Positions 14,223-38,229 of a stretch of DNA of 64,000 bases are shown one piece after another. The stretch lies in the IMG/VR virus record IMGVR_UViG_3300030419_008158, positions 220,430-284,429 of that record. The stretch is one strand, 5' to 3'. The notes beneath the pieces were generated by a model, which saw nothing but the letters and a program-made list of their open reading frames with translations, searched no databases and was not told the DNA's origin. Every line of letters starts with the position of its first letter. Position 1 is the first letter of the stretch. The translations under genes were made by a program, and so were the position numbers.

Positions 14223-14308
14223 AAAGAATCATGTCTCCTCTTACATTTCCTACATTGTAATACTCAAAAATTTTTCGTAATAAAGGAAATCTTAAGAGGC
14301 ACACACTT

Positions 14309-16002: not shown

Positions 16003-16005
16003 ATG

Positions 16006-16212
16006 CTACGCCCTTTTTTGAACAAAATCGTAGAGCTTTTCCGCAACAATCAAAACGTCTTCAGTTGCGTATGGATTGACAGGCATTCGCTGTCCTTCTG
16101 GCTTTAGACATTCATTGTCAAATTGGCGCGCGTTTCGAGATTCAAGAATCCCAATTGCCATTCCTAGCAAGTCACTTCTAAGCTCATATCCGCTCTTATT
16201 TGAATCACCCAT
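16006..16212 (-). CDS. Small hypothetical phage protein
   Basis: MGDSNKSGYELR...AEKLYDFV; AGGAGG RBS. Confidence 0.7.
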   Translation of the reverse strand: MGDSNKSGYELRSDLLGMAIGILESRNARQFDNECLKPEGQRMPVNPYATEDVLIVAEKLYDFVQKRA

Positions 16213-16330
16213 TTTTTCCTCCTTGTGTGTGTGTGTTGTAATGGGTTTCACAAAGCACTTTGCTTTGTAATTTTACTATAGTAAATCATGCATCGATGTT
16301 CACTAAGATATTTATGAACAAGGCTTGCTA

Positions 16331-16903
16331 ATGAAGACACTTGTAATATTTGATTTCGATGACACGCTATTTCGAAGCGGAGCGATGATAGGGGTTCATC
16401 GCCCAGGTAAACCAAAGCGTTATTTGAGCTCTCATGAATACGCGACATATGTGCCTAAAGAGGATGAAGAATTTGACTATGAGCAGTTTCATGTATATCC
16501 ACCAGATCCAGTACCTATTGAAAAATCCACTGAAAAGCTTCAAAGATCTGTGGGTAGTCAGGGCATTAGAAACGTAGTGATACTCACAGCTCGAACACAC
16601 CCAGAACCTGTCGAAGAAGTATTACAAAACTTTGGAATGCCGCCTGTCGAAGTCCTCGCCATAGGATCAGCTGACCCTGAAAGAAAAGCAGATGAAGTTG
16701 AAAGGCTGATCAGTGAAAGAGGATATGAAAGAGTCATTGTGTATGAAGATAGTAGTCCCAATATTGCAGCAATAAAAGCTCGTGTAAAGCCCATCCTAGG
16801 TGGAAATTTTACTGGTTTTAAAGTAAAAGCAACACCTCGAGGAGATGTCCTGCAAAAAGAATCAAAGGGTTACCGTTTCAGGCACATCCGAAACTTCACC
16901 TAG
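16331..16903 (+). CDS. HAD-superfamily phosphatase (RNA-repair/polynucleotide 3'-phosphatase-like)
   Basis: FDFDDT, LTAR, K, YED motifs; preceded by GATATTTA at 16307. Confidence 0.75.
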   Translation: MKTLVIFDFDDTLFRSGAMIGVHRPGKPKRYLSSHEYATYVPKEDEEFDYEQFHVYPPDPVPIEKSTEKLQRSVGSQGIRNVVILTARTHPEPVEEVLQNFGMPPVEVLAIGSADPERKADEVERLISERGYERVIVYEDSSPNIAAIKARVKPILGGNFTGFKVKATPRGDVLQKESKGYRFRHIRNFT

Positions 16904-17073
16904 GTCTCATTGACCTTTACCTAATACACTCATGTGCTAGCGGGCTGACAAAATCCAAGTTGTCTTCGCCATTACCGTCGTGCTCGGACACGTCTTTAGT
17001 GCGTTGCGGCACACTAAAGATTCACATAATACTCCGCAAAGCAAACACTGAAAATGATAGACTTTCAGTGAAT

Positions 17074-17490
17074 TTAATTATCATCCTTGACTCCTGAGCC
17101 GTACCATCTTGCATTCCACCCTCGTGTGTCATAGTGTGTAAAAGTTCTATAAAGCCCTATGCCACCCTTGGCCATTTTGCCCTCCTTTATTAGGCTGACA
17201 ATGACTTCCTTGACTTCTTTAGGTGTCATTCCCTTTATCTTAATGTCGGCAGCTTTTGCACGCATGTGCTGACTTTTTCTTGCGCCGCCTATTCTTCTGT
17301 TGTATTTTGGAGAGCGATACCCAGAAATAATTCGAATTGGCTTGCCAATATAATCTCTAAGAACCTGTAGATTTTTTGCCAAAAAACATACATTGTCCAT
17401 TAGCTCTTCTGGTACATTAGTCCCGTCTTTACACTTAAACTCAGATAATAAAAAATTTTTTTCTAATTTCATGTGATTAATCATATACAA
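17074..17490 (-). CDS. Peptidase M15A (Zn D-Ala-D-Ala peptidase-like)
   Basis: SGYRSP, SQH..AKAADI, FTHYD. Confidence 0.9.
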   Translation of the reverse strand: MYMINHMKLEKNFLLSEFKCKDGTNVPEELMDNVCFLAKNLQVLRDYIGKPIRIISGYRSPKYNRRIGGARKSQHMRAKAADIKIKGMTPKEVKEVIVSLIKEGKMAKGGIGLYRTFTHYDTRGWNARWYGSGVKDDN

Positions 17491-17509
17491 AAAACAAGAA
17501 CTTTACAAT

Positions 17510-18280
17510 TTAGACGCCAGAAACTCTTTTACGTAGCACAGCAATGTGTGTGCCGTTCCACCACTGGAGTGAAGGAGTTTCGAACGGAGTGGGCCGCTTT
17601 CCTGGAATAATTGCTCGTGATGAAACAATGTCAAACCCAAGATCTTCCCATGCACTTCGTGTCCCTCTTCGAACAGGCTCTTGCTCCCAATCATCAATAA
17701 CAGCAATAAATGTATCTGCAAACGCAGGATAAAAATGTACGAAAGCATTTCTTTGAGATTCTTCTGAGTGTTCTCCGTCATAAAAAAATACATCTATTTT
17801 TGGAAGCTTTCTGACATCAAACTGAAAACAGTCTTCTTCGTAAAATTGAATATCTGCATTTGGTAAAAATCTTTCTATGTTCTGCAAAAAACTGGCCCTA
17901 GGGTTGGTCGACTCCGAAAACTCGCTAAAATTATCAATTGCGTGAACAGAAGAAAGTGTGCCTTCGTTTCCTAAGACAGCTGACACCAAAGTAGACCCCA
18001 TATAAGTACCCACTTCCAAGTAATTTGCACTTGGAAGACTGCAAATATTATTCATCATATGACGAAATTGGTAGCCTGAAAATCCTATCAGCTTATTGGG
18101 TGTGTCGATATGTGCCTCCACTACTGAATCGTATGCAAGACTCTTGGGCAACTTAGAGTCATTGGCACACGCTTGCTGAATACTCTTATCAACATGAGCT
18201 GTTAAAGTAACGTCTCTATTGTTATAATCTGCCATCGAGGCGAATTCATTTTCAAAAAGATTTGGGCTGTCTAGTATCAT
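17510..18280 (-). CDS. Class I SAM-dependent methyltransferase (Methyltransf_24-like)
   Basis: LEVGTYMGST, IDNF, FYDGEH, IDDW. Confidence 0.8.
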   Translation of the reverse strand: MILDSPNLFENEFASMADYNNRDVTLTAHVDKSIQQACANDSKLPKSLAYDSVVEAHIDTPNKLIGFSGYQFRHMMNNICSLPSANYLEVGTYMGSTLVSAVLGNEGTLSSVHAIDNFSEFSESTNPRASFLQNIERFLPNADIQFYEEDCFQFDVRKLPKIDVFFYDGEHSEESQRNAFVHFYPAFADTFIAVIDDWEQEPVRRGTRSAWEDLGFDIVSSRAIIPGKRPTPFETPSLQWWNGTHIAVLRKRVSGV

Positions 18281-18312
18281 TTTGTCTATTTTCCTGTCAT
18301 TAAAACTTAGTT

Positions 18313-18388
18313 TGGAGCCACTGAGAGGACTCGAACCTCCGACCTGCTGATTACAAATCAGCTGCTCTACCAGCTGAGCTACAGTGGC
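18313..18388 (-). tRNA. tRNA-Thr(UGU)
   Basis: Cloverleaf, loop TT-TGT-AA, CCA. Confidence 0.95.
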
Positions 18389-18487
18389 ACTTTCACATTA
18401 CATCGTCTCCCAAAAAATGTGTCATAGTAAAATATGAGGTCACTACACACACGGCAAAAAATGCTGCTGTAAACTTTAAAGTTGTCT

Positions 18488-19300
18488 TTAGCATATGTCC
18501 CTTTTTATTTTTGGAATTATTTCGTGATGAATTATGTCAATTGTCGCTTCAGGGCATGAAGTTTGATATGCTCTGTCAAATTTTTTCAAAGCATCATAAA
18601 TTTTTTTGTCATTTCCGGAACCTGTACACTTATCCCCTACAAACCAACACTTTTTCCCTTCAAAGTATTTTAAAGCATAGGTTTTATCCCAGCCGCTAGG
18701 GTAGATATCAATTGATGTTTGCCCGCCCAGAGCACATGTTACATCTATTTTTTCTTTCTCACAAAATTCTCTAACCAGTTCTATGAATTGGTCTCTTATG
18801 TTTGCTGACTTGTCCAGATCTAAAAAAATACTTCGCTCTTTGTCGCCTGAATTTCTTCCGATGGGACACCAGTTTAGCAAAGATTTTCTATAGCTTATAA
18901 ACTCCCCCGTTAGAGGAACATCATGCTTTGCTAAAAGAGCGAGCTGAAGGTATAGCAGCTGTCTAATAAGAAGACGATACTTTTTCTTTCCAACTTTTTG
19001 AATCATAGACGCTGTCTGTACCTCTATGAAGTCACGCTCGTCGTCACACCACTTGTAAATTTGTGTACCGTTACAGGGCATTAGAACGATATCATCTAGG
19101 CTGTGAATGATCCCTGATTGCCACAAGAAGCTGCATTGCTTGGTTACGTAATCGATACCTGAGCCTGTAACTATCGCCACGCTAACATTGCGCAGATCAG
19201 TTAAATCTTTTAGCGCGTGTATCATCTCATCTGTGATGGCTTTTCTCACTGGCGTGAGAGTTCCGTCCATATCAAACAAAACTGTCTGGCAGCTTTTCAT
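18488..19300 (-). CDS. HAD-IIB phosphomannomutase (PMM2/Sec53 type)
   Basis: FDMDGTLT, NWCPIGR, GGQTSIDIYPSGWDKTYAL, GDK...GND. Confidence 0.85.
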   Translation of the reverse strand: MKSCQTVLFDMDGTLTPVRKAITDEMIHALKDLTDLRNVSVAIVTGSGIDYVTKQCSFLWQSGIIHSLDDIVLMPCNGTQIYKWCDDERDFIEVQTASMIQKVGKKKYRLLIRQLLYLQLALLAKHDVPLTGEFISYRKSLLNWCPIGRNSGDKERSIFLDLDKSANIRDQFIELVREFCEKEKIDVTCALGGQTSIDIYPSGWDKTYALKYFEGKKCWFVGDKCTGSGNDKKIYDALKKFDRAYQTSCPEATIDIIHHEIIPKIKRDIC

Positions 19301-19506
19301 TACCACTCTTCTTCAGACTTGATGGGTGCATTACACATATCAAAAGGATCTATTCGAACAGTTCCAGTGCTTTGATTGCGCGACAATAATTTTGAAGCAC
19401 GTTTGACAATATCTTCAAAGACACAAATTCCGGGATCTTTTTCGGTTCCCATAGTATTATAATAATCAATCAAATCCAAAAGTATGGACCTTGTTTCATC
19501 GTTCAT
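19300..19506 (-). CDS. Hypothetical protein
   Basis: Short ORF coupled to the PMM gene. Confidence 0.55.
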   Translation of the reverse strand: MNDETRSILLDLIDYYNTMGTEKDPGICVFEDIVKRASKLLSRNQSTGTVRIDPFDMCNAPIKSEEEW

Positions 19507-19517
19507 TTTTATCCGCC

Positions 19518-19646
19518 TCAAGGATGAATTGGTGGGGATAATGATAGGTCAGCTATCGCCGAAAATGTCCACCATACCGCTAGACCAATTGCAACTCCTA
19601 ATACTGCGCGAAGAAATAGTCGCACTGCAATCATATGTTTCTCCAT
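19518..19646 (-). CDS. Small single-TM membrane protein (42 aa)
   Basis: Below ORF-track cutoff: MEKHMIAVRLFLRAVLGVAIGLAVWWTFSA... Confidence 0.45.
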   Translation of the reverse strand: MEKHMIAVRLFLRAVLGVAIGLAVWWTFSAIADLSLSPPIHP

Positions 19647-19689
19647 CGTATTTGTTAGTATAGCACTTTAAACACAAAAATTCATTTGT

Positions 19690-19765
19690 TGGTGAGCCAC
19701 CTGGGACTTGAACCCAGAACCCACGGATTAAAAGACCGATACTCTTCCTGTTGAGCTAGAGGCCC
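19690..19765 (-). tRNA. tRNA-Lys(UUU), with several stem mismatches
   Basis: Cloverleaf, loop CT-TTT-AA, CCA; U-U mismatches in the acceptor and anticodon stems. Confidence 0.75.
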
Positions 19766-19793
19766 CAACAAACTTTATCTAATACTTAGACAT

Positions 19794-20417
19794 GTGAAAG
19801 CATATGTTAAATCACGCTTCTTCATTGTATTCTCTATCTTTATTTTTACAATTGCGGTATCATGTATTGGCAGTACTTGGTCGCCCAAAAAATCTTCTGT
19901 AAGACAAAATTCACAGCTAGGCGAATGTGATCCATGGAAATCAGGTCCACAAATGATAAAGCTTCCTGTGTTTTCAAATGCATGGCAAATAGTCAGTGAA
20001 TGTGATCGACACGAAAGAGAAGCAGTCACTATTGCAATGATTTTTTTCTACAAAGAATGGCAACACACATTTGGCGACTCTTCAAATAGCGTGTGGATGG
20101 CACTCAACACGCTTCTAATAGAGTGGTCTCAGCTGGACAAAAGAGCAACAGCACACGACATGTCAGGAAAACTTAGATATGAGGCAGCACTTGCAGGAGC
20201 TGCTCTCACTTCTGGTATGATTTGGGTTAGGCCTGGTCATAATGTTCCTGTATGTGAAACTGCATTTGTCCACGAACTAGTGCATATAGCAATTTGGAGT
20301 CAAAAAGGAACAGATGGTGACCCAGATCACTTGGGAGACAAGTATACTGGGTGGTCCGTTGATCACGCTGCGCTCATACAAAGAGTCAACGACCAGCTTT
20401 GCTCTTTGAGCATATAG
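19794..20417 (+). CDS. Secreted/lipoprotein zinc metallopeptidase-like
   Basis: Signal ending AVSC; FVHELVH...GDPDH. Confidence 0.65.
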   Translation: MKAYVKSRFFIVFSIFIFTIAVSCIGSTWSPKKSSVRQNSQLGECDPWKSGPQMIKLPVFSNAWQIVSECDRHEREAVTIAMIFFYKEWQHTFGDSSNSVWMALNTLLIEWSQLDKRATAHDMSGKLRYEAALAGAALTSGMIWVRPGHNVPVCETAFVHELVHIAIWSQKGTDGDPDHLGDKYTGWSVDHAALIQRVNDQLCSLSI

Positions 20418-20421
20418 AAGT

Positions 20422-21156
20422 CTATTTTTTGCTTTTGAAGACCTGATCGCAAAGCTGTGTCGTACTGGGTGTCCCTACATCAAATTCGCAGTACTTCATT
20501 CCATATGGCCTACCAACATTTTCGACCAGTCTGTGTACGTGAATTATCCCATGCATAAAATGTTTTTCTACATTGGCAAGGTCATCATAAAATTGTAGCT
20601 GACTTGTTGGTGTTATAAAGAACCAATCAGAACAGTGCCTATCTGCACCCGCAACATAACCATTTTGATTCAAAACTACAGATGTTTGGAGATTATTGAG
20701 ATCAAGCTTTGACTTAAAAACTAAGTCTGTTCGCATACGAACAAAATACTCATAGTCGCTAGGATTTTCAACCATTCTAGCACAATCTGCAATGCCCTGG
20801 TATTGTGACTTGACTCGGTAATAGATATCTCTCGACTTCTCTAGAGTTATAGGCATATCTCGCTCTATAGAAAGCTTGTTATAGTTTGAAACATCAAACA
20901 CAAGCGGATCATTTACTTCTAGTTTGACCAAGTTACAGGGCTTGTAAAGCTCAACAAAATCTTCTAGCTCATTTGTTTCAAATGTATCATTGTACTCATG
21001 GTGAACTTGTGTGTTTTTCCAGTCTTTGTCCCACTGTAAGTTAGCATAAATGTCATAACTTCCTAAACCATCTAAGAAGTTTTCTTTTATATTGTCAAAC
21101 ACTCTTCTGACAAATCTGGGATAACCCGAAAAACAAACGGCAAATTTTTTCTTCAT
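20422..21156 (-). CDS. Putative glycosyltransferase-like protein
   Basis: AVCFSGYPR...VRMRTDL...SDWFF; lies in the sugar cluster. Confidence 0.5.
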   Translation of the reverse strand: MKKKFAVCFSGYPRFVRRVFDNIKENFLDGLGSYDIYANLQWDKDWKNTQVHHEYNDTFETNELEDFVELYKPCNLVKLEVNDPLVFDVSNYNKLSIERDMPITLEKSRDIYYRVKSQYQGIADCARMVENPSDYEYFVRMRTDLVFKSKLDLNNLQTSVVLNQNGYVAGADRHCSDWFFITPTSQLQFYDDLANVEKHFMHGIIHVHRLVENVGRPYGMKYCEFDVGTPSTTQLCDQVFKSKK

Positions 21157-22115
21157 TCCCACGCTCCCCTTATCTCGTCAAATCTACTGAAGAGTTTTTT
21201 TGCAAGTGCTTCTCTAACAGACCCCAGCAGAGATCTAAAGGGCTCTTCGGTGAAGCAATAATGACCTGATACTTCTACAATCATTCTTTCAGGTGGCGAA
21301 CTTTTGTGCTCTTCAGGAATCCACTTGGAAAATTTATTGACTTTTTTGCATGTTCGAAGAGCATCATCAAATCTAATCCCATGCTCCAGAAGAAGTCGGG
21401 TTTGTGTGACACCAAACTCAGGCGCTATGTTAATAGAGTCTAAGCCTAGCGAGGCTCTTTTTTGTATTTGTGCCCTTGACAAGTAATCCCCGTTGTGCTC
21501 TTTGGAAAGAATGCCGTGCTTTTTTGTAATCTCCACCATGTCTTCAAGCCTGGCCGGATCAAAATTTCCAACGTTGGACGTGCCACTTATTTTTACGCCT
21601 GACTGTATTACGCCGAACTTTACACGGTCAAATTCTCTACCCATGCTTTTTTGAAGAGATGACAAAATAAAATCTAAGTCTTCAGCTGTATACGGAAAAA
21701 TTGACTCTTCGGTACCTACTTCAAATAGAATATTATCGTCTAGATTCATGCAGTAAGAAATTAACTCTTCAGTTTTTCGAACGCCCTCTTCAACAGTGCT
21801 GCACGTCTTCCATGGATCGATGTGAAGCATGTCAAATTTGCTTTCAATATCGTTTTTTAGGCTGTCTAGACCGTCATCATGCTCTGACCCTTGACCGGGC
21901 CCACCATGATCTCTAACTAAGCAAACAGCATCACTTTTCTCTTTAACATATTGAGAAAAATCACCTGTCGTCCAACTATTGACGTACCCACCGGTATTTT
22001 CAATTTGCCGCCTAGACGGAATCAAACCTAGCGAGCTTTTTTCTTTGGAGTATTCTATTACTATGTCAACTATCTCTTGAGACATGGGGCCCACAAACAA
22101 TCTTGGTATTTTCAT
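21153..22115 (-). CDS. GatZ/KbaZ-like (tagatose pathway) TIM-barrel protein
   Basis: SRRQIE, RDHGGP, LHIDP, FEVGTEE, KEHNGDY, NIAPEFG. Confidence 0.7.
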   Translation of the reverse strand: MKIPRLFVGPMSQEIVDIVIEYSKEKSSLGLIPSRRQIENTGGYVNSWTTGDFSQYVKEKSDAVCLVRDHGGPGQGSEHDDGLDSLKNDIESKFDMLHIDPWKTCSTVEEGVRKTEELISYCMNLDDNILFEVGTEESIFPYTAEDLDFILSSLQKSMGREFDRVKFGVIQSGVKISGTSNVGNFDPARLEDMVEITKKHGILSKEHNGDYLSRAQIQKRASLGLDSINIAPEFGVTQTRLLLEHGIRFDDALRTCKKVNKFSKWIPEEHKSSPPERMIVEVSGHYCFTEEPFRSLLGSVREALAKKLFSRFDEIRGAWE

Positions 22116-23692
22116 AGATCACCTCTTTTCTCCAGGCTTCGAAACAGATTGTACTTGCCGAAATTAAACAAAAACTTATCAAGTGGGTGCTCATGAAGTG
22201 GAGACATATTAATCCATATCAAAGATGTAAGCATCTTAACCTTGTCTAAATCATACCCGTGTGACGTTACGAAACTGTGTAAAACTTCTTGACAATCAAT
22301 TAGATTTTTTCTGCATAAAATGTCACACTCATAACCTACTTTTCGAGGTTGCAGTATGTAGTGACTTTGATTGACTAGCTCATGATTGAAGACAAGATTG
22401 TGATTTAGTTTTGCAAGATCATAGTACACATCACCCACATCTAATCTTCCTGCAAAATCTTGACGCCAGTCTATTAGAACAAAATCTGTTTCTGTTTCGA
22501 TGACGTTGTCAAGAATCAGATCGCCATGTATTGTAGTAGCTATGCCATTACAAAGCCATTCCCAATCTATTGAAGACAACATCTCTTGTACAGGCGGGAT
22601 TTTCTTTCCGTTGATAATTGATGCTTTATCAGACAGATCCCCTAAATGAAGCTGTATCCTCTTTTTAGTTTTTTCAAAATAAAACTTATGACAGTCTGCA
22701 GATATGTCTTCGTTACTCTTACCCGGGTTCCACATGTTTTGTGAAACCCAGTCTAAAAATAGTGACATTTTATCAGGTGTGACAGAATCAGCAAAGAGGT
22801 CTCCTGGGACGTATCTATATTTGAAAAAATGTCTAGAAGATGCAGCTATTCTAGGTACCAACCCAGACAAAGAAGTTGCCCTTTCTACACGTTTACTAAT
22901 AAGCGTCTCATCATGAAAAAACTTGACGACGTGATTATTTACAATATAAATGTTTTCCTGAATTTTGTCCAAGACTTCTATCGAAGAGGACATTTTCTCT
23001 CTGGTTTTTGACAAAGCGAAAGGCTCGCCGATATCATACCATTCGTCTACTAATACTGTGTCAAATTGAATATTTTCCTGGTCTGACATCATCTGCAAAA
23101 CATGGCAATCCGAAAGACTTTTAGCACTTGCCTTGTCCGACGTAGCTACTATTCTATCTAGACATCTCCAGAATATTTCGAAGTCTTTAATTCCAGCCAA
23201 GCCCGGATAGGCGTAATCGTAATTAATTTCTCCCTTTTCATTGATCTTGATAAGGTGTTGATCAGGTGAAACATTGATAGTTCTATACTGCTCAGAAGTT
23301 TCTGATTTTGCAGTACCGATCCAGTTATATGAAGGGTCAGGTATCTTGTCGAGTATGACTGAGTCGCAAACATGAAAAATAAAAGGGCACTGCAATTTCG
23401 GCCTGGCGACGTTCATTGAATGAAGAAGGCTAGAGTTTTCACCCTTATAATTTTCGACTTCTACAAATTCAAAACTAGCACCAGGATAAGTCAACTCCAA
23501 AAACTCTTTCACGTGATAACCATAATGTCCTATGGTTATCACAAATTTTGTACCAGAAGGATAATTCTCAATTATGTGTGATAGTGCAGGTTTGTCTCCC
23601 ACTCTTACAAGTGACTTGTTAGTAAAGTCTGTCAAGCTACCTAAGCGACTCCCTAAGCCGCTGGTCGTTATTAGTACTTTATGCTCTGCCAT
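22112..23692 (-). CDS. Sugar-phosphate nucleotidyltransferase fused to APH/choline-kinase-like domain
   Basis: SGLGSRL...NKSLV; WYDIG; HGDLILDN, LIDW. Confidence 0.8.
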   Translation of the reverse strand: MAEHKVLITTSGLGSRLGSLTDFTNKSLVRVGDKPALSHIIENYPSGTKFVITIGHYGYHVKEFLELTYPGASFEFVEVENYKGENSSLLHSMNVARPKLQCPFIFHVCDSVILDKIPDPSYNWIGTAKSETSEQYRTINVSPDQHLIKINEKGEINYDYAYPGLAGIKDFEIFWRCLDRIVATSDKASAKSLSDCHVLQMMSDQENIQFDTVLVDEWYDIGEPFALSKTREKMSSSIEVLDKIQENIYIVNNHVVKFFHDETLISKRVERATSLSGLVPRIAASSRHFFKYRYVPGDLFADSVTPDKMSLFLDWVSQNMWNPGKSNEDISADCHKFYFEKTKKRIQLHLGDLSDKASIINGKKIPPVQEMLSSIDWEWLCNGIATTIHGDLILDNVIETETDFVLIDWRQDFAGRLDVGDVYYDLAKLNHNLVFNHELVNQSHYILQPRKVGYECDILCRKNLIDCQEVLHSFVTSHGYDLDKVKMLTSLIWINMSPLHEHPLDKFLFNFGKYNLFRSLEKRGDL

Positions 23693-24020
23693 ATTTGTCT
23701 TTTAGGCGGACGATATCGTCCTCGCCAAAGTAAGATCCCGTTTGAACTTCAATGAACACCAAATCTTCACTACCACAATTTTTGATTGTGTGTTTAGACA
23801 TAACGGGAACGTGAACTCGATCACCTCCGGAAACTGTCAAAGGCTTGCCGTCTAAAAACACTTCGCCGGCGCCCGAAACTATTATCCAGTCCTCAGCTCG
23901 CTTGTGATGAAATTGATAGCTTGGGCTTTGCCCGGGCTTCACAGTAATTTTTTTTACTTTACAATTTTCATCGTCCAAAAGAACTTCATAGATACCCCAT
24001 GGCCTCTCTGTCTTTTCCAT
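23679..24020 (-). CDS. Mannose-6-phosphate isomerase type II cupin
   Basis: ERPWG, SYQFHHKRAEDW, EVQTGSYFGEDDIVR. Confidence 0.9.
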   Translation of the reverse strand: MEKTERPWGIYEVLLDDENCKVKKITVKPGQSPSYQFHHKRAEDWIIVSGAGEVFLDGKPLTVSGGDRVHVPVMSKHTIKNCGSEDLVFIEVQTGSYFGEDDIVRLKDKYGRA

Positions 24021-24362
24021 CTAGTTTCCCCTATATGCCACAATTGATGCTATCTTTAGATCTTCTTTTTCTCCAGAGAATGTAATAATGTCAACAACAG
24101 GCAAGACCGGGTCGTCATTTGCAAAAATAGAAAGTTCTGCTATTACTGTCATATCATTGACATGTAGATTGTCTACGTTGACCCGCAGAGAATTGACTGA
24201 CTTGAAGATTTCGTCGTTTGCTCCCAAAACATCCTGCTTTCCAGACACAGAAATGTTCCAATCTTTGAGAGAGACATTTTCATGAAACATATCCCCCAGC
24301 GTTTCTAGTTGCTTTTGTTCAAATGCAGTAAAATAAGATCTCGCAATATCTTCTAAATTCAT
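24021..24362 (-). CDS. SnoaL/NTF2-like protein
   Basis: YFTAF...MFHENVSLKDW...VVDIITF. Confidence 0.75.
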   Translation of the reverse strand: MNLEDIARSYFTAFEQKQLETLGDMFHENVSLKDWNISVSGKQDVLGANDEIFKSVNSLRVNVDNLHVNDMTVIAELSIFANDDPVLPVVDIITFSGEKEDLKIASIVAYRGN

Positions 24363-24388
24363 AGTTTTCCTTTTTATGAACCGAGATG

Positions 24389-26035
24389 CTATCCTGCGTA
24401 GGTTAGCATTCTTTCGGCTTCGCTTGTACCGTACTTGTCAATATAGTATTTTTCTGACAATTCTTCAAATATCTTATTTCCCACGTCGTCGAACTTTTCT
24501 GCTCTTTTAATGTCCTTATGGTATGACTTGGGCAGTGTGACGTAAAGAGGAAAGACCCGTTGAATTCCCAACATTTCATCAGGCTGAAGGTATGGTTTTG
24601 GCATTCTCAAAATAGACTTTTCTATGAAAGAAGTCGCTTGAAGATTCGGGTCTAACCATCCTTCTTCTATCGCTTTCTGTCGTAACACTGTTCCTCTATA
24701 GGGTGCAAATATATTGACTGCGATAGAATCAAAAGTTTCGATGTCCCTTACAAGATTGATGGTATCAAGAACCAACTCTCTTGTCTCGTAGGGCATTCCG
24801 ATAATTGTGTTAACTGAGTAGGGCAATTTGAAATTTCCTAAAATCTTAGCCTTTTCAATCATAGTTTCGTTTTTGATTCTACGATAAAGTCTTTTTCTTC
24901 GAAACTCTTCATTACCATGCTCCAGCCCAAAAGACATTCGATACAAACCTACTTCACGAAGCCATCCTATCTTATCTTCATCAATATCTTCAAACCGAGT
25001 CTGGCACCAGAAAGGAAGCCGAAAGTCTTTGTACATCTCAGCAAATTCTTTTAGTTCGCTTTTTGGGCGGGCCATAAAAGCATCATCATTAATATACAGA
25101 AAATTAGGATTGTACTTCTCAACCATCGATTCTAGCTCTCGTCGAACTGTATCGATACTTTTTCGTCTTGTGTATACGCCCTGCTTTTTTTCTTTTGCAA
25201 GGACACTCTGGATGGGAGAATTACAAAACGTGCACTGGTATGGGCAGCCTCTGTAAGTTTCAATTGGAATTGCCTTCCAAATCTTAGCACCGAGAGGCCT
25301 AAGAAAACGTCTTTCATCGAACAAAGAAAAATCTGGAATTATGTCATTGACATTTACCAGAGGTCTGGGTCCGTTGATTATGATTTTTCCATCTTTATCT
25401 TTTGCCCGGGTTCCTTTGATATCGAGCAGAGATGTAGAGTTTCGCACAGACTCACAAAATTCAGGTATAATGTGCTCTCCTTCACCCGATGCTATGCATT
25501 GCACGTTAGGATCAGAAATTACATCATTCGGTGCCATTGTTGGAAAAACCCCACCTATGATCGATTTAATGTTTGGATATTTTGAAACAACAGACATCAA
25601 GTCTTGCACTTGAGGCCATGTATCCTCGACCAGCGTAGAAACAATAACTACATGTGGGTCAAACTCTTCAAGCTTCTGGGTAAAATCTCCTAACAAGTCT
25701 GTCTTTGGATTGCCAAATAGCTTTATTGGATCAAACTTTCTGCTGGCCATGAGCTTGTTTGCACGCGTAGCACTAGCTGATTCGTCCATTGCTTCTTTTA
25801 CATTTTCATCGTCTGCTTTTCCGACAAACTCATAAGTTGGCATATAAGGTGTGCAGTCAAAAAGATCCACATTATATTTTTGTTCTTTGAGAATTGCTGT
25901 CCACAAGCCTATAGCATAAGAAGGTGTCAACATCATGCTCAAGTTGGGATAGACAATTAAAGTTCGAAAGTCTTCTCTATCAATGCTTTTTGCTGTTGAT
26001 GAAACTTCTTTCTTGATTTTTACTTCTCTAGACAT
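24389..26035 (-). CDS. Cobalamin-binding radical SAM enzyme (class B methyltransferase-like)
   Basis: IIGGVFPT, GEGE, RGCPYQCTFC, DDAF, GMPYET. Confidence 0.85.
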   Translation of the reverse strand: MSREVKIKKEVSSTAKSIDREDFRTLIVYPNLSMMLTPSYAIGLWTAILKEQKYNVDLFDCTPYMPTYEFVGKADDENVKEAMDESASATRANKLMASRKFDPIKLFGNPKTDLLGDFTQKLEEFDPHVVIVSTLVEDTWPQVQDLMSVVSKYPNIKSIIGGVFPTMAPNDVISDPNVQCIASGEGEHIIPEFCESVRNSTSLLDIKGTRAKDKDGKIIINGPRPLVNVNDIIPDFSLFDERRFLRPLGAKIWKAIPIETYRGCPYQCTFCNSPIQSVLAKEKKQGVYTRRKSIDTVRRELESMVEKYNPNFLYINDDAFMARPKSELKEFAEMYKDFRLPFWCQTRFEDIDEDKIGWLREVGLYRMSFGLEHGNEEFRRKRLYRRIKNETMIEKAKILGNFKLPYSVNTIIGMPYETRELVLDTINLVRDIETFDSIAVNIFAPYRGTVLRQKAIEEGWLDPNLQATSFIEKSILRMPKPYLQPDEMLGIQRVFPLYVTLPKSYHKDIKRAEKFDDVGNKIFEELSEKYYIDKYGTSEAERMLTYAG

Positions 26036-26387
26036 CTATTTCTTCTATTCCTTTATTTCTAGTAACACAGTAGGCATACGCCGTAGGAATATCAGAATCT
26101 TTTTTGAAATCATTGATGAGAATTCTGGATCCGCCGCCGATGCCCATGACAAGCTGATCGTATATTATGCCCGCATCAGACAATTGTTCAACTGTCTGCT
26201 TTCGCATACACTCCTTTCGGCCTGTCACCAGGATTATATTATACCCTTTGCGATCCCACTCATTCAGCTTTTCAATAGTTCCTTTTAGGAGCGTCATTTT
26301 GCTATGAGAAGATGCAGCTGTACTTGGTTTCATATGTGTTACAAGCGTGCCATCAATATCACAAAAAATAGTTTTAGGACGACTCAT
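26028..26387 (-). CDS. HAD phosphatase (capsule-biosynthesis phosphatase-like)
   Basis: DIDGTL, VTGR, YDQLVMG, IND; start refined to MSRPK. Confidence 0.75.
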   Translation of the reverse strand: MSRPKTIFCDIDGTLVTHMKPSTAASSHSKMTLLKGTIEKLNEWDRKGYNIILVTGRKECMRKQTVEQLSDAGIIYDQLVMGIGGGSRILINDFKKDSDIPTAYAYCVTRNKGIEEIDV

Positions 26388-26402
26388 CTCGCTGTCTCCG
26401 TG

Positions 26403-26478
26403 TGGAGCGGGTGATGGGTCTCGAACCCACAACATTCAGCTTGGAAGGCTGACACTCTACCAATTGAGTTACACCCGC
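26403..26478 (-). tRNA. tRNA-Gly(UCC)
   Basis: Cloverleaf, loop CT-TCC-AA, U73, CCA. Confidence 0.95.
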
Positions 26479-26585
26479 AAAAAAATGGTTACTAGATAAT
26501 ACTAAGATCATTTTTCACCTAGTCCGGTTATGGACTTATTATTGTTCATCATATAGACACCACTGTCTTATTCTACTGTCATAGT

Positions 26586-27203
26586 TTAATCCTTTTTGCC
26601 GCCATTGTTAACCCAGCTAAGTTTTTTCCTAAGCATTTTATGAATTCCTGGATTCACGATCAAAGATTTTGGTAGCAATTCGTGTCTAATAAAATTTCTC
26701 ATAAATCGAGTATCAGAGTTACTGGGATCTTCAACATAAGATACGTTCTTTCTTGCACACCAATCTTCAAAAATTGCTTTTCTGGTTTGCAAAAAAGGTC
26801 GAATATAACAATCTCTAGTCTCTGGGATCAAATACGAAGTACCGTGCAGTGAAGTAAAAATCCAAGTCTCAGCAACGTCATCCAAGTGATGACATGTAAT
26901 TACTGGCAGATTTTCTCGAGAATCTTCAAAAAAATCATATCTCTTCACTCTCCAAAAGTCTTCTAAAGAAACACCCTTTGGAGGTTCATCCCAGTTTTTT
27001 CCCACAGTAATTGGGATATCTTTTTCTATACAGTACTTTCGAACTAGAACCTCTGCCTTGTCAGAATAATCTGTCCCGTGATTATAGTGCAGAACACGCA
27101 CATCGTGTGACTTGCGTAAAAAATCTAAAGCTGCCATTGAATCACAACCACCGGACACAGCAATAGCAATTTGTCTCGGCAGCTTTCTTGAAAGTCGAAT
27201 CAC
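26586..27203 (-). CDS. tilS: tRNA(Ile)-lysidine synthase (catalytic domain only)
   Basis: AVSGGCDS, HYNHG, RY.FF, HHLDDVAET, IRPFL, EDPSN, RNFIRH. Confidence 0.9.
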   Translation of the reverse strand: MIRLSRKLPRQIAIAVSGGCDSMAALDFLRKSHDVRVLHYNHGTDYSDKAEVLVRKYCIEKDIPITVGKNWDEPPKGVSLEDFWRVKRYDFFEDSRENLPVITCHHLDDVAETWIFTSLHGTSYLIPETRDCYIRPFLQTRKAIFEDWCARKNVSYVEDPSNSDTRFMRNFIRHELLPKSLIVNPGIHKMLRKKLSWVNNGGKKD

Positions 27204-27221
27204 GACAATCTCCTTTTTGAA

Positions 27222-27298
27222 TGGTGGGCCTCCGGGGACTTGAACCCCGAACCTGCCGGTTATGAGCCGGATGCTCTAACCTATTGAGCTAGAGGCCC
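27222..27298 (-). tRNA. tRNA-Ile2(CAU, lysidine substrate); Met not excluded
   Basis: GGGCCTCTAGCTCA...CCGG CT-CAT-AA CCGG...ACCA; directly upstream of tilS. Confidence 0.85.
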
Positions 27299-27308
27299 TC
27301 AAATAACT

Positions 27309-27381
27309 TACCCCCTGTCCGGTTCGAACGGACGACCTAGCGGTTAAAAGCCGCGTGCTCTACCAACTGAGCTAAGGAGGT
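27309..27381 (-). tRNA. tRNA-Lys(UUU), no encoded CCA
   Basis: ACCTCCT/AGGGGGT acceptor, loop CT-TTT-AA, T-arm GTCCG-TTCGAAC-CGGAC. Confidence 0.9.
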
Positions 27382-27387
27382 ATAAAT

Positions 27388-27602
27388 GAAGCGGGTCACC
27401 CAACATCCCGCTTCTGACACGGCCTATCCCCCTCGGCCTAACTGCGGGTTATCGCAGGTCTGCATTCTGGGTTACGCTTACGCAATCACGAGCCTGGCTT
27501 CAACCGGCATGCCACTCGCTCCATCTCGTTTATAAGATGTTAACGCTCCAAACGCTAAGCTAAGTGCCCGGTGATCTATCCAGGTCCCTTGACCCGTGTC
27601 TC
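27388..27602 (-). ncRNA. Unassigned structured ncRNA candidate in the tRNA cluster
   Basis: Closing helix GACACGG/CCGTGTC, several internal hairpins, 3' hairpin GAAGCGGG/CCCGCTTC; no credible ORF. Confidence 0.45.
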
Positions 27603-27618
27603 CCACATAACTTTATCA

Positions 27619-27797
27619 AACCCGGGGCCGGATTTGAACCGGCTACCCCACCTCGTAACGTAGATCCACTTTGCATAAGTGTTTCCAACGCAGACCCCAT
27701 CGCCACTAGTTCCGGCAGGGGCGATCTTCCCTGTTTGCTCCGGTGTGTGGATCTTTGGTTTCCTACTGGGTGCGCTCTCCCAATGAGCTACCCGGGT
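27619..27797 (-). ncRNA. tRNA-like RNA with 114-nt structured insert replacing the anticodon loop
   Basis: Acceptor ACCCGGG/CCCGGGT, D-stem GCTC/GAGC, T-arm GCCGG-TTCAAAT-CCGGC, anticodon stem CACC/GGTG. Confidence 0.8.
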
Positions 27798-27803
27798 ACA
27801 TAA

Positions 27804-27880
27804 TGGCACCCCGAACAGGATTCGAACCTGTGACCCTCGGCTTAGAAGGCCGATGCTCTATCCAGCTGAGCTATCGGGGC
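27804..27880 (-). tRNA. tRNA-Arg(UCU)
   Basis: Cloverleaf, loop CT-TCT-AA, CCA. Confidence 0.95.
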
Positions 27881-27918
27881 ATTTTTTATTTAGATTTCAA
27901 TGAGCAATCTTACAAGAT

Positions 27919-27947
27919 ATTATAACATCTTCATTGATCATTTACAT
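27919..27947 (-). promoter_or_regulatory. Sigma70-like promoter ATGTAA-N17-TATAAT (extended -10 TG)
   Basis: Matches the window-wide GTGTAA-N17-TATAAT motif; upstream of tRNA-Arg. Confidence 0.65.
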
Positions 27948-27959
27948 CTATTATATGAT

Positions 27960-28045
27960 TGGTGCGGCTGGCGGGATTCGAACCCGCATAGCTCAAAGCC
28001 GACAGATTTTAAGTCTGTTGTGTATACCAGTTCCACCACAGCCGC
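27960..28045 (-). tRNA. tRNA-Leu(UAA)
   Basis: Long variable arm, loop CT-TAA-AA, CCA. Confidence 0.95.
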
Positions 28046-28093
28046 GAAATCTCTTTATATTTCAATGAGCGTGTCAACCTCTTGACAGAAAAT

Positions 28094-28122
28094 ATTATAA
28101 CACGCTGTGACTGTCTTTACAC
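28094..28122 (-). promoter_or_regulatory. Promoter GTGTAA-N17-TATAAT
   Basis: Exact motif upstream of tRNA-Leu. Confidence 0.7.
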
Positions 28123-36850: not shown

Positions 36851-38080
36851 CTACTGCAAGGAAAAGGGAAGGTTTTCACCCTTGTTTCCGCCGGCGGCAA
36901 CCACATCCTTGTAATAACTCCGACAAACTGTTCGGAAATAATCCACACCACCCTCATTTGGGCTGTAGAGTGAATAGAGAGTCTTATAACCTAGGTTACT
37001 ATTGGCTCCGGCATTCGTTGCTTCTACGACCTCACTAACCATATCATATGCCACTGCACGAATCTCTTCTGGCAGCGTAATGAGCATCTTATCCAGCCGA
37101 TCATTCTTGATACAGTTCATCAAGTACTTGTAGCTTAGCTTAGATTTTACCATTTCTCCAATATAAGCGATGTACTTGAACTTGATGCGTCGATCTTTGC
37201 CATCGGCGTCTGGAATAAACGCAACCCAGCCCTCACGATTATGAACATCACGGTCGTTGATCTCTGCTACAAGCTCAGTCAGAGTCATTTCTCGAAACTC
37301 TGGCAATACAAAATACTCGTACAATTCATCGGAGATTGCCTCGAGAACCGGGCGGCCAACCATTTCGCCGCTAGTGTCGTATGCTTCAAGCAAGAACAGC
37401 TTTTTAGCATCACCATAGTCCACATGAACTCGAGTAATGGGATGAACAAACTCACAAACTAAGCTCATCAGATCCTTGCCAAACCGCTTTGAAATGATTT
37501 GTGCCTTCATGAATGTGCTTCGTGCAATCATGTCAAGCGCAGCTTCAGCTGAAGGCGTGCCTAAGCGGCCTCGAGTAGTTGCGCATAGCTTGCGATCATG
37601 CATAAAATACTCGATCATGTGACCGTCTTCTTTAGCAGTGCATGATAACAGCTTCTTACCTGCAGCAGCAGCAAGAACATCCATGCCCGTCTCAGGGATT
37701 TCTGATTGGTTGAAGAACTTCTCAAAACCGCGAGAGACGAGCCTTACGCCTTCTACATTTCCTGGATTTTCCCAGGCGTAAATAAGACCTCGCATTTGTC
37801 GCAAGACAGGAGACCATCCGCCTTCAATCTCGTGCAGCAAGTTGTGTGCTGAAGCTGAATAGTTCAGCAAAATAAGCTTTCGCTCTTCGTCGATGTCAAA
37901 TCCGATAAGAGATCCCGCCTGCAACCCCCATTCCGGATTGACGCCAAGAATCTCACACAACTCGCGATCATAACTCTTTTTGAAAGAAGCCCAATTAGCC
38001 TTCTTATCATCACGGTTAGTCATCTCACGAGTGATGAGTGCAACAAGTTGAGGGATTTGATTGTCCAAGATCTGATTCAT
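36851..38080 (-). CDS. ATP-dependent RNA ligase (T4 Rnl1-like)
   Basis: MRGLI, SRGFEKFFN, KEDG, ATTRG, CEFV, EGWV, IKFK; start MNQIL with GGAG RBS. Confidence 0.8.
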   Translation of the reverse strand: MNQILDNQIPQLVALITREMTNRDDKKANWASFKKSYDRELCEILGVNPEWGLQAGSLIGFDIDEERKLILLNYSASAHNLLHEIEGGWSPVLRQMRGLIYAWENPGNVEGVRLVSRGFEKFFNQSEIPETGMDVLAAAAGKKLLSCTAKEDGHMIEYFMHDRKLCATTRGRLGTPSAEAALDMIARSTFMKAQIISKRFGKDLMSLVCEFVHPITRVHVDYGDAKKLFLLEAYDTSGEMVGRPVLEAISDELYEYFVLPEFREMTLTELVAEINDRDVHNREGWVAFIPDADGKDRRIKFKYIAYIGEMVKSKLSYKYLMNCIKNDRLDKMLITLPEEIRAVAYDMVSEVVEATNAGANSNLGYKTLYSLYSPNEGGVDYFRTVCRSYYKDVVAAGGNKGENLPFSLQ

Positions 38081-38088
38081 GCTTTCTC

Positions 38089-38229
38089 CTAAACGCCCAT
38101 GGCGCACATGCAAACAACTAAAACATACATCATCGGTATGCTGATGATTCCAAAAATAATATCGTTACGAAGCTCACGCTTTCGAATAGTTTCCCACTTT
38201 TCGTTTCGGGGTAGTTTTCGAAAAACCAT
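38089..38229 (-). CDS. Small single-TM protein (46 aa)
   Basis: Below cutoff; AGGAGG RBS; MVFRKLPRNEKW...IIFGIISIPMMYVLVVCMCAMGV. Confidence 0.6.
   Translation of the reverse strand: MVFRKLPRNEKWETIRKRELRNDIIFGIISIPMMYVLVVCMCAMGV

What the first reader, a model, noticed from the sequence alone, without database searches (positions are those of the whole stretch)
27619..27797. tRNA-like RNA with a 114-nt structured domain in place of the anticodon loop
Seen: a perfect 7-bp acceptor (ACCCGGG/CCCGGGT), U8-A9, D-arm GCTC-ATTGGGA-GAGC, stem CACC/GGTG, 5-nt variable loop and T-arm GCCGG-TTCAAAT-CCGGC. There is no encoded CCA, and the element starts 6 nt after tRNA-Arg. The insert (27767->27654) is itself structured: AGATCCAC/GTGGATCT, CCGG/CCGG with CAGGG/CCCTG, TGCGT/ATGCA with a GAAA tetraloop, and a possible ATCGCC/GGCGAT pseudoknot. 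It is too short for a typical group I or II intron. Removing 27659-27767 would give the loop C-U-UAC-G-A (Val-like) on a 4-bp stem. Inference: either a new small tRNA intron or ribozyme (the phage encodes an RNA ligase), or a tRNA scaffold displaying a functional RNA such as a decoy for anticodon nucleases or other tRNA-sensing defences. T4 species I/II RNAs are a loose precedent.
Basis: partly seen in the sequence, partly recalled or inferred. Interest (0 to 1): 0.82.

Follow-up and report, generated by a model that had tools for sequence, protein, structure and literature searches.

The report
Interrupted tRNA-Val gene family in phages
The element is real: it belongs to an apparently undescribed family of marine-phage genes in which a valine-type tRNA carries a conserved, folded 110-140-base RNA domain inside its anticodon loop, which matches no known intron or ribozyme family; how it works is still open.

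Summary
The tRNA-like gene at 27619-27797 (- strand) is as described, with 109 extra bases between anticodon-loop nucleotides 32 and 33. ARAGORN in default mode and Rfam both miss it. It is absent from the three closest relatives of this 284-kb marine jumbo phage, so it is probably a recent gain. It is not an orphan: pattern scans and a spurious-ORF search found 10 further distinct homologues in uncultured marine phage contigs, none in GenBank phages or Rfam. Removing the insert uniformly gives tRNA-Val(UAC) in 7 of 11 members, which fits neighbouring tRNAs that all read A-ending codons. In the window's subfamily the anticodon arm is degenerate (4-bp stem here) while the insert is 87-90% identical between phages, so the insert itself is under selection. 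Whether it is excised as a new kind of small intron, sealed by the phage's Rnl1-type ligase, or stays in a stable tRNA-like RNA is unresolved.

The parts
27619..27797 (-). Whole element: tRNA-Val-type scaffold with a 109-nt insert (179 nt including discriminator U)
   Evidence: homologues
27768..27797 (-). 5' tRNA part: acceptor 5' strand, U8 A9, D arm, G26, anticodon-stem 5' strand CACC, C32
   Evidence: scaffold covariation on A3
27659..27767 (-). Insert (AGUAGGA...GGAUCUACG) between nt 32 and 33 of the anticodon loop
   Evidence: 87-90% identical to the L042, L046 and L059 inserts
27619..27658 (-). 3' tRNA part: U33 UAC G37 A38, stem 3' strand GGUG, variable loop GGGUA, T arm, acceptor 3' strand, discriminator U; no CCA
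27762..27766 (-). P0 5' strand GUAGG; pairs with UCUAC (27660-27664) and brings both insert ends together. It can alternatively pair with the exon's UUAC
   Evidence: helix 1: 98% paired, invariant or one-sided changes only
27660..27664 (-). P0 3' strand UCUAC, followed by the invariant last insert base G (27659)
27749..27759 (-). 5' strands of P1a (27757-27759) and P1' (AGAUCC, 27749-27754)
   Evidence: helices 2 and 3 (2 and 4 pairs with compensatory changes)
27687..27697 (-). 3' strands of P1' (GGGUCU, 27692-27697) and P1a (27687-27689)
27712..27743 (-). P2b (CCGG/CCGG), A-rich bulge AGCAAA (27734-27739), and P3 hairpin CAGGG/CCCUG with loop AAGAUCGC
   Evidence: helices 5 and 6 (4 and 2 pairs with compensatory changes)
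27699..27703 (-). Pseudoknot 3' strand GCGAU, pairing with the P3 loop AUCGC (27721-27725)
   Evidence: 91% paired, 2 pairs with compensatory changes, 18/500 shuffles as good. By eye also in L053, L062 and L052
27667..27686 (-). Conserved junction GGAAA (27682-27686) and P4 hairpin CACU-UAUGCAA-AGUG (27667-27681)
   Evidence: helix 7: 100% paired, 3 pairs with compensatory changes
27804..27880 (-). tRNA-Arg(UCU) immediately upstream (6-nt spacer); probably co-transcribed (inferred)
36851..38113 (-). T4 Rnl1-type RNA ligase gene: candidate sealing enzyme if the insert is excised (inferred link)
   Evidence: PF09511, E = 7e-12
26028..26435 (-). HAD phosphatase resembling the polynucleotide kinase-phosphatase domain, inside the tRNA cluster (inferred link)

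Best explanation
The element is a functional member of a conserved, undescribed family of marine-phage RNA genes. Each is a tRNA-Val-type gene with a folded 109-142-nt RNA domain inserted between anticodon-loop nucleotides 32 and 33.

Shown: the tRNA scaffold and the domain's fold are both kept by compensatory evolution. The fold is a three-way junction made of helix P0, a long bent arm (P1a-P1'-P2-P3) whose loop pairs back as a pseudoknot, and hairpin P4.

Inferred: the gene is transcribed with the neighbouring tRNAs. RNase P and RNase Z trim its outer tRNA-like ends, and a CCA-adding enzyme adds CCA.

Inferred, about 50% for the family: the domain is an intervening sequence. Its two ends sit opposite each other at the foot of P0, next to the anticodon stem. 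Cutting at both ends and sealing by the phage's Rnl1-type ligase would give tRNA-Val(UAC) for GUA codons. Whether RNA or a nuclease does the cutting is unknown.

For the window's own subfamily the anticodon arm has drifted: a 4-bp stem here, and wrong loop lengths or a non-U base at position 33 in its closest homologues. Yet the domain and the acceptor/T half stay under selection. I therefore think this copy is kept mainly for the RNA domain itself, displayed on or released from a tRNA-like carrier. I put the chance that it yields a decoding-competent tRNA-Val at about 25%.

The confidence given (0.45) is for this combined reading. That the family is a real, selected, structured RNA I hold at about 0.95.
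For: Eleven distinct members in uncultured marine phage contigs. One type occurs in at least 22 contigs.

Insert fold: 94.7% of cells paired, 17 pairs with changes on both sides, 0/500 shuffles as good, and slid controls fall to 32-46%. Pseudoknot: 91% paired. Scaffold: 94.4% paired, 10 pairs with changes on both sides.

Uniform removal of the insert gives tRNA-Val(UAC) in 7 of 11 members. The anticodon triplet is always UAC or GAC, both valine, and A73 is present in 9 of 11.

All neighbouring phage tRNAs have U34 or are CAU with a TilS-like gene, so they read A-ending codons, and no member locus has another tRNA-Val. GUA makes up 26% of the window's Val codons.

The base before the insert is C or U in 10 of 11 members and the last insert base is G in 11 of 11. 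Rnl1-type ligase and a PNKP-like phosphatase are encoded in the window.

Within the window's subfamily the insert is 87-90% identical while the exons are 64-72% identical. L059 shows compensatory acceptor changes (AUCGGGG/CCUCGAU).
Against: No transcript data exist, so expression, processing and splicing are all inferred. No endonuclease or ribozyme activity that would cut at the junctions is identified, and 109 nt is far below any known self-splicing intron.

Five members have anticodon arms that cannot give a canonical 7-nt loop on a 5-bp stem: the window, L042, L047, L046 and L059. L062 has C33. Position 37 is G, which is unusual for tRNA-Val (own knowledge).

The CM alignment used for one search was fitted to the structure, which inflates pair counts. 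P0 shows no compensatory change.

The element is absent from the three nearest relatives, so it is dispensable for that phage lineage.
Confidence: 0.45

Rival explanations
1. The insert is never excised. The RNA works as a stable ~180-nt tRNA-like non-coding RNA in every member. The tRNA top half serves for processing, CCA addition, stability and perhaps valylation (A35, C36 and A73 are ValRS identity elements). The pseudoknotted domain binds a protein, RNA or small ligand. The canonical-looking anticodon loop halves simply reflect descent from a tRNA-Val.
For: The insert is more conserved than the exons in the window's subfamily. Anticodon arms are degenerate in 5 of 11 members while the acceptor and T arms covary. 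No known splicing machinery fits. Precedents for tRNA-like domains fused to other modules are tmRNA and YrlA (own knowledge).
Against: Six lineages whose inserts have diverged to 35-45% identity with the window's insert (63% for L043) still keep C32 before the insert, UUACGA after it (CUACGA in L062), and a 5-bp covarying stem. In subfamily I the same bases vary while the insert ends stay invariant. That pattern suggests a separate decoding constraint. The only anticodon change seen, UAC to GAC, keeps valine and is not compensated in the GUAG partner.
Confidence: 0.35
2. The insert is a new class of small catalytic intron, either self-splicing or self-cleaving at both ends. It is removed in all members, including this one, and the exons are joined either by the RNA itself or by Rnl1 with the end-healing enzymes.
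For: The termini are invariant (5' AGUAGGA, 3' GGAWCUAYG), as are the junction bases (GRAAA, GA) around a three-way junction. The -1 C/U and last-base G match the group I rule reported for bacterial tRNA introns (bioRxiv 10.1101/2020.01.27.920355). GUAG can pair either with the insert's own 3' end or with the 3' exon. A ligase and a phosphatase are present.
Against: There is no match to any Rfam ribozyme or intron model at E up to 10 in 8 members. The helix order is not that of group I (no P3/P7 crossing) or of the HDV ribozyme, and no hammerhead core motif is present (by inspection). A Y/G terminus pair is expected by chance about 1 time in 8. Degenerate exons in subfamily I would make splicing pointless there.
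Confidence: 0.2
3. It is a tRNA gene disabled by a selfish or random DNA insertion (a MITE or an IS200/IS605-type remnant), now a decaying pseudogene.
For: The element is absent from the nearest relatives. The window copy has a 4-bp anticodon stem. TTATGT occurs on both sides of the inserted block. The insert has short inverted repeats.
Against: There is no second copy of the insert in the window or in any locus. The insert always sits at the same site of the same tRNA type. Compensatory changes occur in both scaffold and insert across 11 lineages. G-U pairs are read on the tRNA strand. There is no transposase context, and the left flank is variable, unlike IS608-type targets.
Confidence: 0.05

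Closest known systems
Group I (IC3) introns in bacterial and phage tRNA anticodon loops (Leu-UAA, fMet, Ile-CAU, Arg-CCU and newer settings)
   Same: An intervening RNA inside the anticodon loop of a bacterial-type tRNA gene. The base before it is U or C and its last base is G. A 5'-proximal segment can pair with the 3' exon.
   Different: Length is 109-142 nt against roughly 200-400 nt. There is no hit to Rfam Intron_gpI. The helix order lacks the P3/P7 pseudoknot and the P4-P6 domain. The host tRNA (Val) and the site (32/33) are not among the four classical settings named in the text of 10.1101/2020.01.27.920355; its Table 1 with all 21 settings is an image and could not be read.
Archaeal and eukaryal tRNA introns cut by the splicing endonuclease (bulge-helix-bulge motif), including introns that carry a functional RNA such as the box C/D RNA of archaeal tRNA-Trp
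   Same: A structured, possibly functional RNA sits in the anticodon loop. The anticodon can pair with the intron. The exon ends would be joined by a protein ligase.
   Different: There are no 3-nt bulges separated by a 4-bp helix at the junctions (by inspection). The host is bacterial: the phage carries tmRNA and bacterial-type tRNAs. No splicing endonuclease gene was seen. The site is 32/33, not 37/38.
tmRNA and YrlA (Y RNA-like): tRNA-like domains fused to another RNA module
   Same: An acceptor/T-arm half that tRNA enzymes can recognise is joined to a pseudoknotted or protein-binding module in place of the anticodon arm.
   Different: This element keeps a full D arm and anticodon stem. It has no G3:U70, no tag reading frame that is conserved, and no permuted topology. 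The Rfam tmRNA model has no match at the element, and the YrlA hits are chance fusions of two adjacent tRNAs.
Phage T4 species I/II stable RNAs and the T4 PNK/Rnl1 anticodon-loop repair pathway
   Same: Extra stable RNAs are encoded inside a phage tRNA cluster. An Rnl1-type ligase specialised for broken anticodon loops is present in the same genome.
   Different: No sequence comparison with the T4 RNAs could be made here; this is recalled from memory only. In T4 the ligase repairs nuclease damage and is not known to splice.

Membership tests
Canonical tRNA (Rfam RF00005) | Cloverleaf with 7-bp acceptor, D arm, T arm with the UUC loop motif (T-psi-C loop; UUCAAAU here), and conserved U8, G18 G19, U54 U55 C56 | tested here: met
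   scaffold covariation
Canonical tRNA (Rfam RF00005) | Contiguous 5-bp anticodon stem closing a 7-nt loop | tested here: not met
   A 109-nt insert lies between nt 32 and 33. The stem is only 4 bp in the window copy. There is no RF00005 hit even at E up to 10. ARAGORN finds it only with the intron option.
Group I intron in tRNA | Match to the conserved catalytic core (P3-P9, Rfam Intron_gpI) | tested here: not met
   No hit at E up to 10 in the window region or in 7 other member loci. Length is 109-142 nt.
Group I intron in tRNA | U (rarely C) at -1 and G as the last intron base | tested here: met
   C or U at -1 in 10 of 11 members, G as last base in 11 of 11. This is weak evidence on its own.
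Group I intron in tRNA | Self-splicing with guanosine | not testable with these tools
   Needs an in vitro assay.
Bulge-helix-bulge (archaeal/eukaryal) tRNA intron | Two 3-nt bulges separated by a 4-bp helix at the splice sites | tested here: not met
   The junctions lie in a 2x2 or asymmetric internal loop next to P0 or GUAG/UUAC (inspection).
Small self-cleaving ribozymes (hammerhead, HDV-like, twister, twister-sister, pistol, hatchet, hairpin) | Match to the family covariance model or conserved core | tested here: not met
   No Rfam hit at E up to 10. By inspection, the helix order differs from the HDV fold and there is no CUGANGA...GAAA...UH hammerhead core.
tmRNA | tRNA-Ala-like ends with G3:U70 and a tag reading frame | tested here: not met
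   The acceptor is ACCCGGG/CCCGGGU. The ORF through the insert is not conserved. The genuine tmRNA is elsewhere, at 11466-11829.
YrlA / Y RNA-like | Permuted tRNA-like module with a closed acceptor and an Rsr-binding stem (RF02553) | tested here: not met
   The only hits are sub-threshold (18-24 bits against a 69-bit gathering score) and span two adjacent tRNA genes.
MITE / IS200-IS605-derived element | Multiple dispersed copies, a conserved target, and terminal hairpins | tested here: not met
   There is a single copy per locus, always in the same tRNA site. The left flank is variable.
New family proposed here (interrupted tRNA-Val of marine phages) | tRNA scaffold, plus an insert starting AGURGGA and ending CUAYG, with the P1a/P1'/P2/P3/P4 fold | tested here: met
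   The window scores 135.8 bits against model R1, but it is one of the four seed sequences. Independent members L047, L043, L060, L053, L061 and L062 are recovered full length.

The most novel reading that the evidence does not exclude
The insert is the first example of a new class of miniature catalytic intron (about 110-140 nt) in bacterial-virus tRNA genes. It would cut itself out at both ends, with the exons joined either by the RNA or by a phage Rnl1-type ligase. That would amount to a bacterial-world tRNA splicing pathway distinct from group I self-splicing and from the archaeal/eukaryal endonuclease pathway. The released RNA might have a second function.
Probability: 0.2. Interest if true: 0.92.

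Novelty: new variant of a known kind. Interest (0 to 1): 0.72.

Why it matters
As far as I could find, the only introns described in bacterial and phage tRNA genes are group I ribozymes of 200 nt or more (bioRxiv 10.1101/2020.01.27.920355). A conserved, covarying 110-140-nt domain at a fixed site of a phage tRNA-Val gene fits no Rfam family. It therefore points either to an unknown way of removing an intervening sequence from a bacterial-type tRNA, or to a new type of tRNA-scaffolded regulatory or anti-host RNA. The former could be a small ribozyme, or host RNases working with a phage RNA ligase. Both readings can be tested directly with a 180-nt transcript. The family is common in ocean viromes: one type occurs in at least 22 Tara and other contigs. 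It is invisible to default tRNA and Rfam annotation. It also shows that phage tRNA clusters exchange such genes between unrelated phages.

Tried and rejected
1. blastn of the region and of three other members against GenBank phages gave no match.

2. Megablast of 20 kb of the window found only a tRNA-Arg hit.

3. tRNA-anchored patterns in viral contigs found only the source contig or an unrelated tRNA-Arg(ACG).

It found no homologue, only nested tRNAs.

5. Synteny through the TilS-like gene brought in relatives that lack the element.

6. Synteny through the NUDIX gene showed that the three closest relatives have an empty site.

7. The genome contigs core pattern gave 0 hits. The scaffold pattern gave one real hit and two false ones.

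8. Group I, bulge-helix-bulge, hammerhead, HDV, twister and pistol were each considered by model search or inspection and rejected. K-turn, tmRNA-like peptide tagging (the ORF is not conserved) and IS608-type insertion were rejected in the same way.

10. The idea that the insert is itself a tRNA-like substrate for RNase P and RNase Z was considered. P0 plus P4 would act as a minihelix and give 3'-OH and 5'-P ends suited to Rnl1. The predicted cut sites are off by one base, and nothing could be tested.

11. The strict promoter and terminator scan found no promoter-like site on the gene strand and no terminator-like site between the RNA genes.

12. L051 (divergent interior, odd 3' end) and L057 (56-nt insert) were left out of the covariation counts as doubtful members. 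L052 was in A3 but was not recovered by the model, so it is not in A6.

Full report
**What is at the coordinates**

All genes in this part of the window are on the - strand. Read 5' to 3', the order is:
- NUDIX gene (28531-28133)
- tRNA-Leu(UAA)
- tRNA-Arg(UCU) (27880-27804, CCA encoded)
- 6 nt (UUAUGU)
- the element (27797-27619)
- a 236-nt G+C-rich spacer (27618-27383)
- tRNA-Lys(UUU)
- tRNA(CAU)
- a TilS-like PP-loop gene

These are a perfect 7-bp acceptor stem, U8 A9, D arm GCUC-AUUGGGA-GAGC, G26, stem CACC/GGUG, variable loop GGGUA, T arm GCCGG-UUCAAAU-CCGGC, discriminator U, and no CCA.

ARAGORN in default mode and the Rfam tRNA model both miss it.

The minimum-free-energy fold reproduces the cloverleaf, but energies are not significant on their own. 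The z-score is -1.8 for the element and -1.4 for the insert. The region is 53-57% G+C, against 42% for the whole window.

**Origin and closest relatives**

The window is identical to IMG/VR contig 3300030419_008158, which is 284 kb, and to a Tara Oceans scaffold. The phage carries a tmRNA, a PhuZ-like tubulin and a tail sheath gene, among others.

The three closest relatives I could fetch have NUDIX proteins 85%, 78% and 72% identical to the window's. They have the same Leu-Arg gene order but no element. In the two whose contigs extend far enough, the order continues spacer RNA-Lys-Met-TilS. In all three, tRNA-Arg-CCA is followed by a short U-rich spacer and then the same UUAUGU-GGGAGACACGG start of the spacer RNA.

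The most divergent of the three also lacks the element, so a gain in the window's lineage is the simpler reading. This is an inference.

The insert has no second copy in the window or in any locus fetched.

**Finding the family**

Patterns anchored on the tRNA arms found nothing beyond the source contig. A pattern that fixed the loops and left the stems free found a second member, L042. Patterns built from the two sequences found more:
- The 5' junction AGTAGGAANCCNAAGATCC and a core pattern found L043 (identical to L045) and L046.
- Translating the open frame that runs from tRNA-Leu into the element, then searching the protein collection, recovered spurious ORFs. Their contigs hold L047, which is on at least 22 contigs including one NCBI record, plus L051 and L052.
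- A scaffold-plus-junction pattern found L053, L059, L060, L061 and the short variant L057 in IMG/VR.
- The same pattern found L062 on a 10-kb contig binned to a Flavobacteriales MAG.

GenBank phages hold nothing similar. A core pattern found nothing in 185,579 reference genomes.

Together with the window this gives 11 good distinct members. All come from uncultured, mostly marine, phage-like contigs.

In three syntenic contigs (L043, L046, L047) the gene lies in a tRNA cluster between a 5'-3' exonuclease gene and a DnaB-type helicase gene. That helicase is outside the stretch of L046 that was examined. These are a different kind of phage from the window's jumbo phage. L046 comes from the same metagenome as the window.

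**Structure**

Independent folds of each insert and the alignments point to a common architecture. I encoded it in a covariance model built from four collinear members. The model recovers the other members full length, including the distant ones (E from 1e-16 to 0.26).

On the model-guided alignment, 94.7% of pair cells are standard pairs. Seventeen of 29 pairs show changes on both sides. No shuffle out of 500 reaches the observed values, and sliding the partners drops pairing to 32-46%. The caveat is that this alignment was fitted to the structure.

The fold is a three-way junction with these parts:
- **P0** joins the two insert ends: GUAGG with UCUAY. The pairs are invariant or one-sided, so covariation gives no evidence either way.
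- **A long arm**, P1a-P1'-P2a-P2b-(A-rich bulge ACAAACA/AGCAAA)-P3. Compensatory changes occur in every helix: for example CCGG/CCGG becomes CCAG/CUGG, and CAGGG/CCCUG becomes CGGG/CCCG.
- **Hairpin P4**: CACU/AGUG in the window, CGUU/AACG in L042, CACC/GGUG in L047, and CACUGC/GCAGUG in L043.

The P3 loop pairs with the strand just 3' of P2. The sequences differ between subfamilies: AUCGC:GCGAU, GAUCA:UGAUC and AAUUG:UAAUU. Pairing is 91%, two pairs have compensatory changes, and 18 of 500 shuffles do as well.

The bases that never change are the insert termini (AGUAGGA and GGAWCUAYG) and the junction GRAAA.

The 8-bp closing stem has no covariation and is no better than shuffles. Its strands are used by P1', P4 and P0 instead. 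The UGCGU/AUGCA stem with a GAAA loop is contradicted by L042 and L046.

The tRNA scaffold covaries as well. It is 94.4% paired, with 10 pairs changed on both sides and 0/500 shuffles as good. Examples are ACCAGGG/CCCUGGU against AUCGGGG/CCUCGAU, and CCGCC/GGCGG against CUAUC/GAUGG.

**Is it a tRNA-Val with an intron?**

Evidence for:
- Removing AGURGGA...CUAYG uniformly gives tRNA-Val(UAC) in 7 members. The loop is C-U-UAC-G-A (C-C-UAC-G-A in L062). Six of the seven have a 5-bp covarying stem; the window's is 4 bp.
- The triplet is UAC or GAC in all 11 members, and both are valine anticodons. A73 is present in 9 of 11.
- Every neighbouring phage tRNA reads an A-ending codon: UAA, UCU, UUU, UAU, UCC, UGU, UGA, UGG, or CAU next to a TilS-like gene. 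No member locus holds another tRNA-Val.
- GUA makes up 26% of Val codons in 47 window ORFs.
- The base before the insert is C or U in 10 of 11 members, and the last insert base is always G. That is the rule reported for the group I introns, the only introns described in bacterial tRNA genes (bioRxiv 10.1101/2020.01.27.920355).
- The phage encodes a T4 Rnl1-type RNA ligase. It also encodes a PNKP-like phosphatase inside the tRNA cluster.

Evidence against:
- The insert is half the size of the smallest known self-splicing introns.
- It matches no Rfam intron or ribozyme model at E up to 10 in eight members.
- It has no bulge-helix-bulge motif.
- In the window's own subfamily the anticodon arm is not canonical. 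The window has a 4-bp stem. L042 and L047 have lost one base on each side. L046 has 10 extra bases and G33. L059 has a 6-nt loop.
- In that same subfamily the insert is 87-90% identical between phages whose exons are only 64-72% identical, while the acceptor stem still shows compensatory changes.

My reading has three parts:
- The canonical loop halves in the other subfamilies argue for a decoding constraint there, and so for excision.
- The pattern in the window's subfamily argues that the insert and the tRNA top half are selected for something other than decoding.
- I cannot tell whether the insert is cut out.

If it is cut out, the geometry is simple. Both junctions face each other at the foot of P0, next to the anticodon stem. 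An Rnl1-type ligase is the natural sealing enzyme.

**Comparison and novelty**

The closest known things are:
- group I introns of bacterial tRNA genes, which share the place and the end rule but have a different size and core;
- archaeal tRNA introns that carry functional RNAs, which are the same idea with different motifs and host;
- tRNA-like chimeras such as tmRNA and YrlA.

Each membership test fails on a defining feature. I found no description of this family in Rfam 15 or in the searchable literature. I rate it as a new variant of a known kind: an intervening or displayed RNA in a tRNA gene. I give about a 20% chance that it is a new class of small catalytic intron.

**Side observations**

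The 236-nt spacer next to the element is itself a conserved structured RNA with compensatory changes, and it has no Rfam match.

The metagenome scan turned up about ten loci where a complete tRNA, flanked by a helix, sits inside the anticodon loop of another tRNA-like gene. It also turned up one further tRNA with a 110-nt non-tRNA insert.

Noticed in passing
window 27383-27618 (- strand): A 236-nt G+C-rich RNA lies directly 3' of the element. It is conserved in relatives L014, L024 and (more divergent) L022, which lack the element. Five pairs have compensatory changes in two hairpins, for example CUGCG..CGCAG against CUGCUC..GAGCAG against CUACC..GGUAG. It ends in a conserved hairpin with loop AUGUUGGGUGA. 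No Rfam match.
   Followed up: partly
L027 9518-9676, L031, L032 574-739, L036, L037, L038, L039 (Thr in Thr); L028 2086-2230, L030, L040 (Val, Phe or Asn inside a tRNA-like shell): Metagenome contigs in which a complete tRNA plus a flanking helix sits inside the anticodon loop of another tRNA(-like) gene. In seven cases a tRNA-Thr(CGU) lies between nt 35 and 36 of a tRNA-Thr(CGU). The junctions lie at the foot of a helix and no bulge-helix-bulge was seen in the one locus inspected (L027). The organisms were not identified.
   Followed up: no
L034 343-492: Another tRNA gene (acceptor GCCGAUG/CAUCGGC) with an insert of about 110 nt in the anticodon loop. The insert is not a tRNA and is unrelated in sequence to the family described here.
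   Followed up: no
L057 4357-4480: A tRNA-like gene with only a 56-nt insert that starts AGUAGGA and contains GGUGGCGAUACC. It may be a miniature or ancestral relative of the family. It has no UUACGA after the insert.
   Followed up: no
window 26586-27298 (- strand): tRNA(CAU) is followed at once by a 205-aa TilS-like PP-loop protein, and the pair is conserved in relatives (L003, L014). This suggests the phage makes its own lysidine-modified tRNA-Ile2 for AUA codons.
   Followed up: partly
window, all 8 tRNA genes (12333-28045): Every phage tRNA here has U34, or is CAU next to the TilS-like gene, so each reads an A-ending codon (UCA, ACA, AAA twice, GGA, AUA, AGA, UUA). Two separate tRNA-Lys(UUU) genes are present; the one at 27308-27382 lacks an encoded CCA.
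   Followed up: partly
window 27885-27960 and 28050-28100 (- strand): The motif GCTCATTGAAAT(A/C)TAAA recurs upstream of tRNA-Leu and tRNA-Arg and is conserved in relatives. Upstream of tRNA-Leu it lies within a TTGACA-N17-TATAAA promoter-like site, which the strict scan did not report.
   Followed up: no
window 11466-11829 (- strand): A phage-encoded tmRNA with tag peptide ANDNVEYDYALAA.
   Followed up: no
window 10097-11185, 12768-14222, 24389-26035: A tubulin/FtsZ-like (PhuZ-type) gene, a full-length PEP carboxykinase gene, and a B12-binding radical SAM enzyme next to the tRNA cluster.
   Followed up: no
L042 9641-9821: In this member the D loop has lost G18 G19 and the T loop has lost C56 (UUAAAGU). 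This is a joint loss of the elbow tertiary pair, while the insert stays 88% identical to the window's.
   Followed up: no
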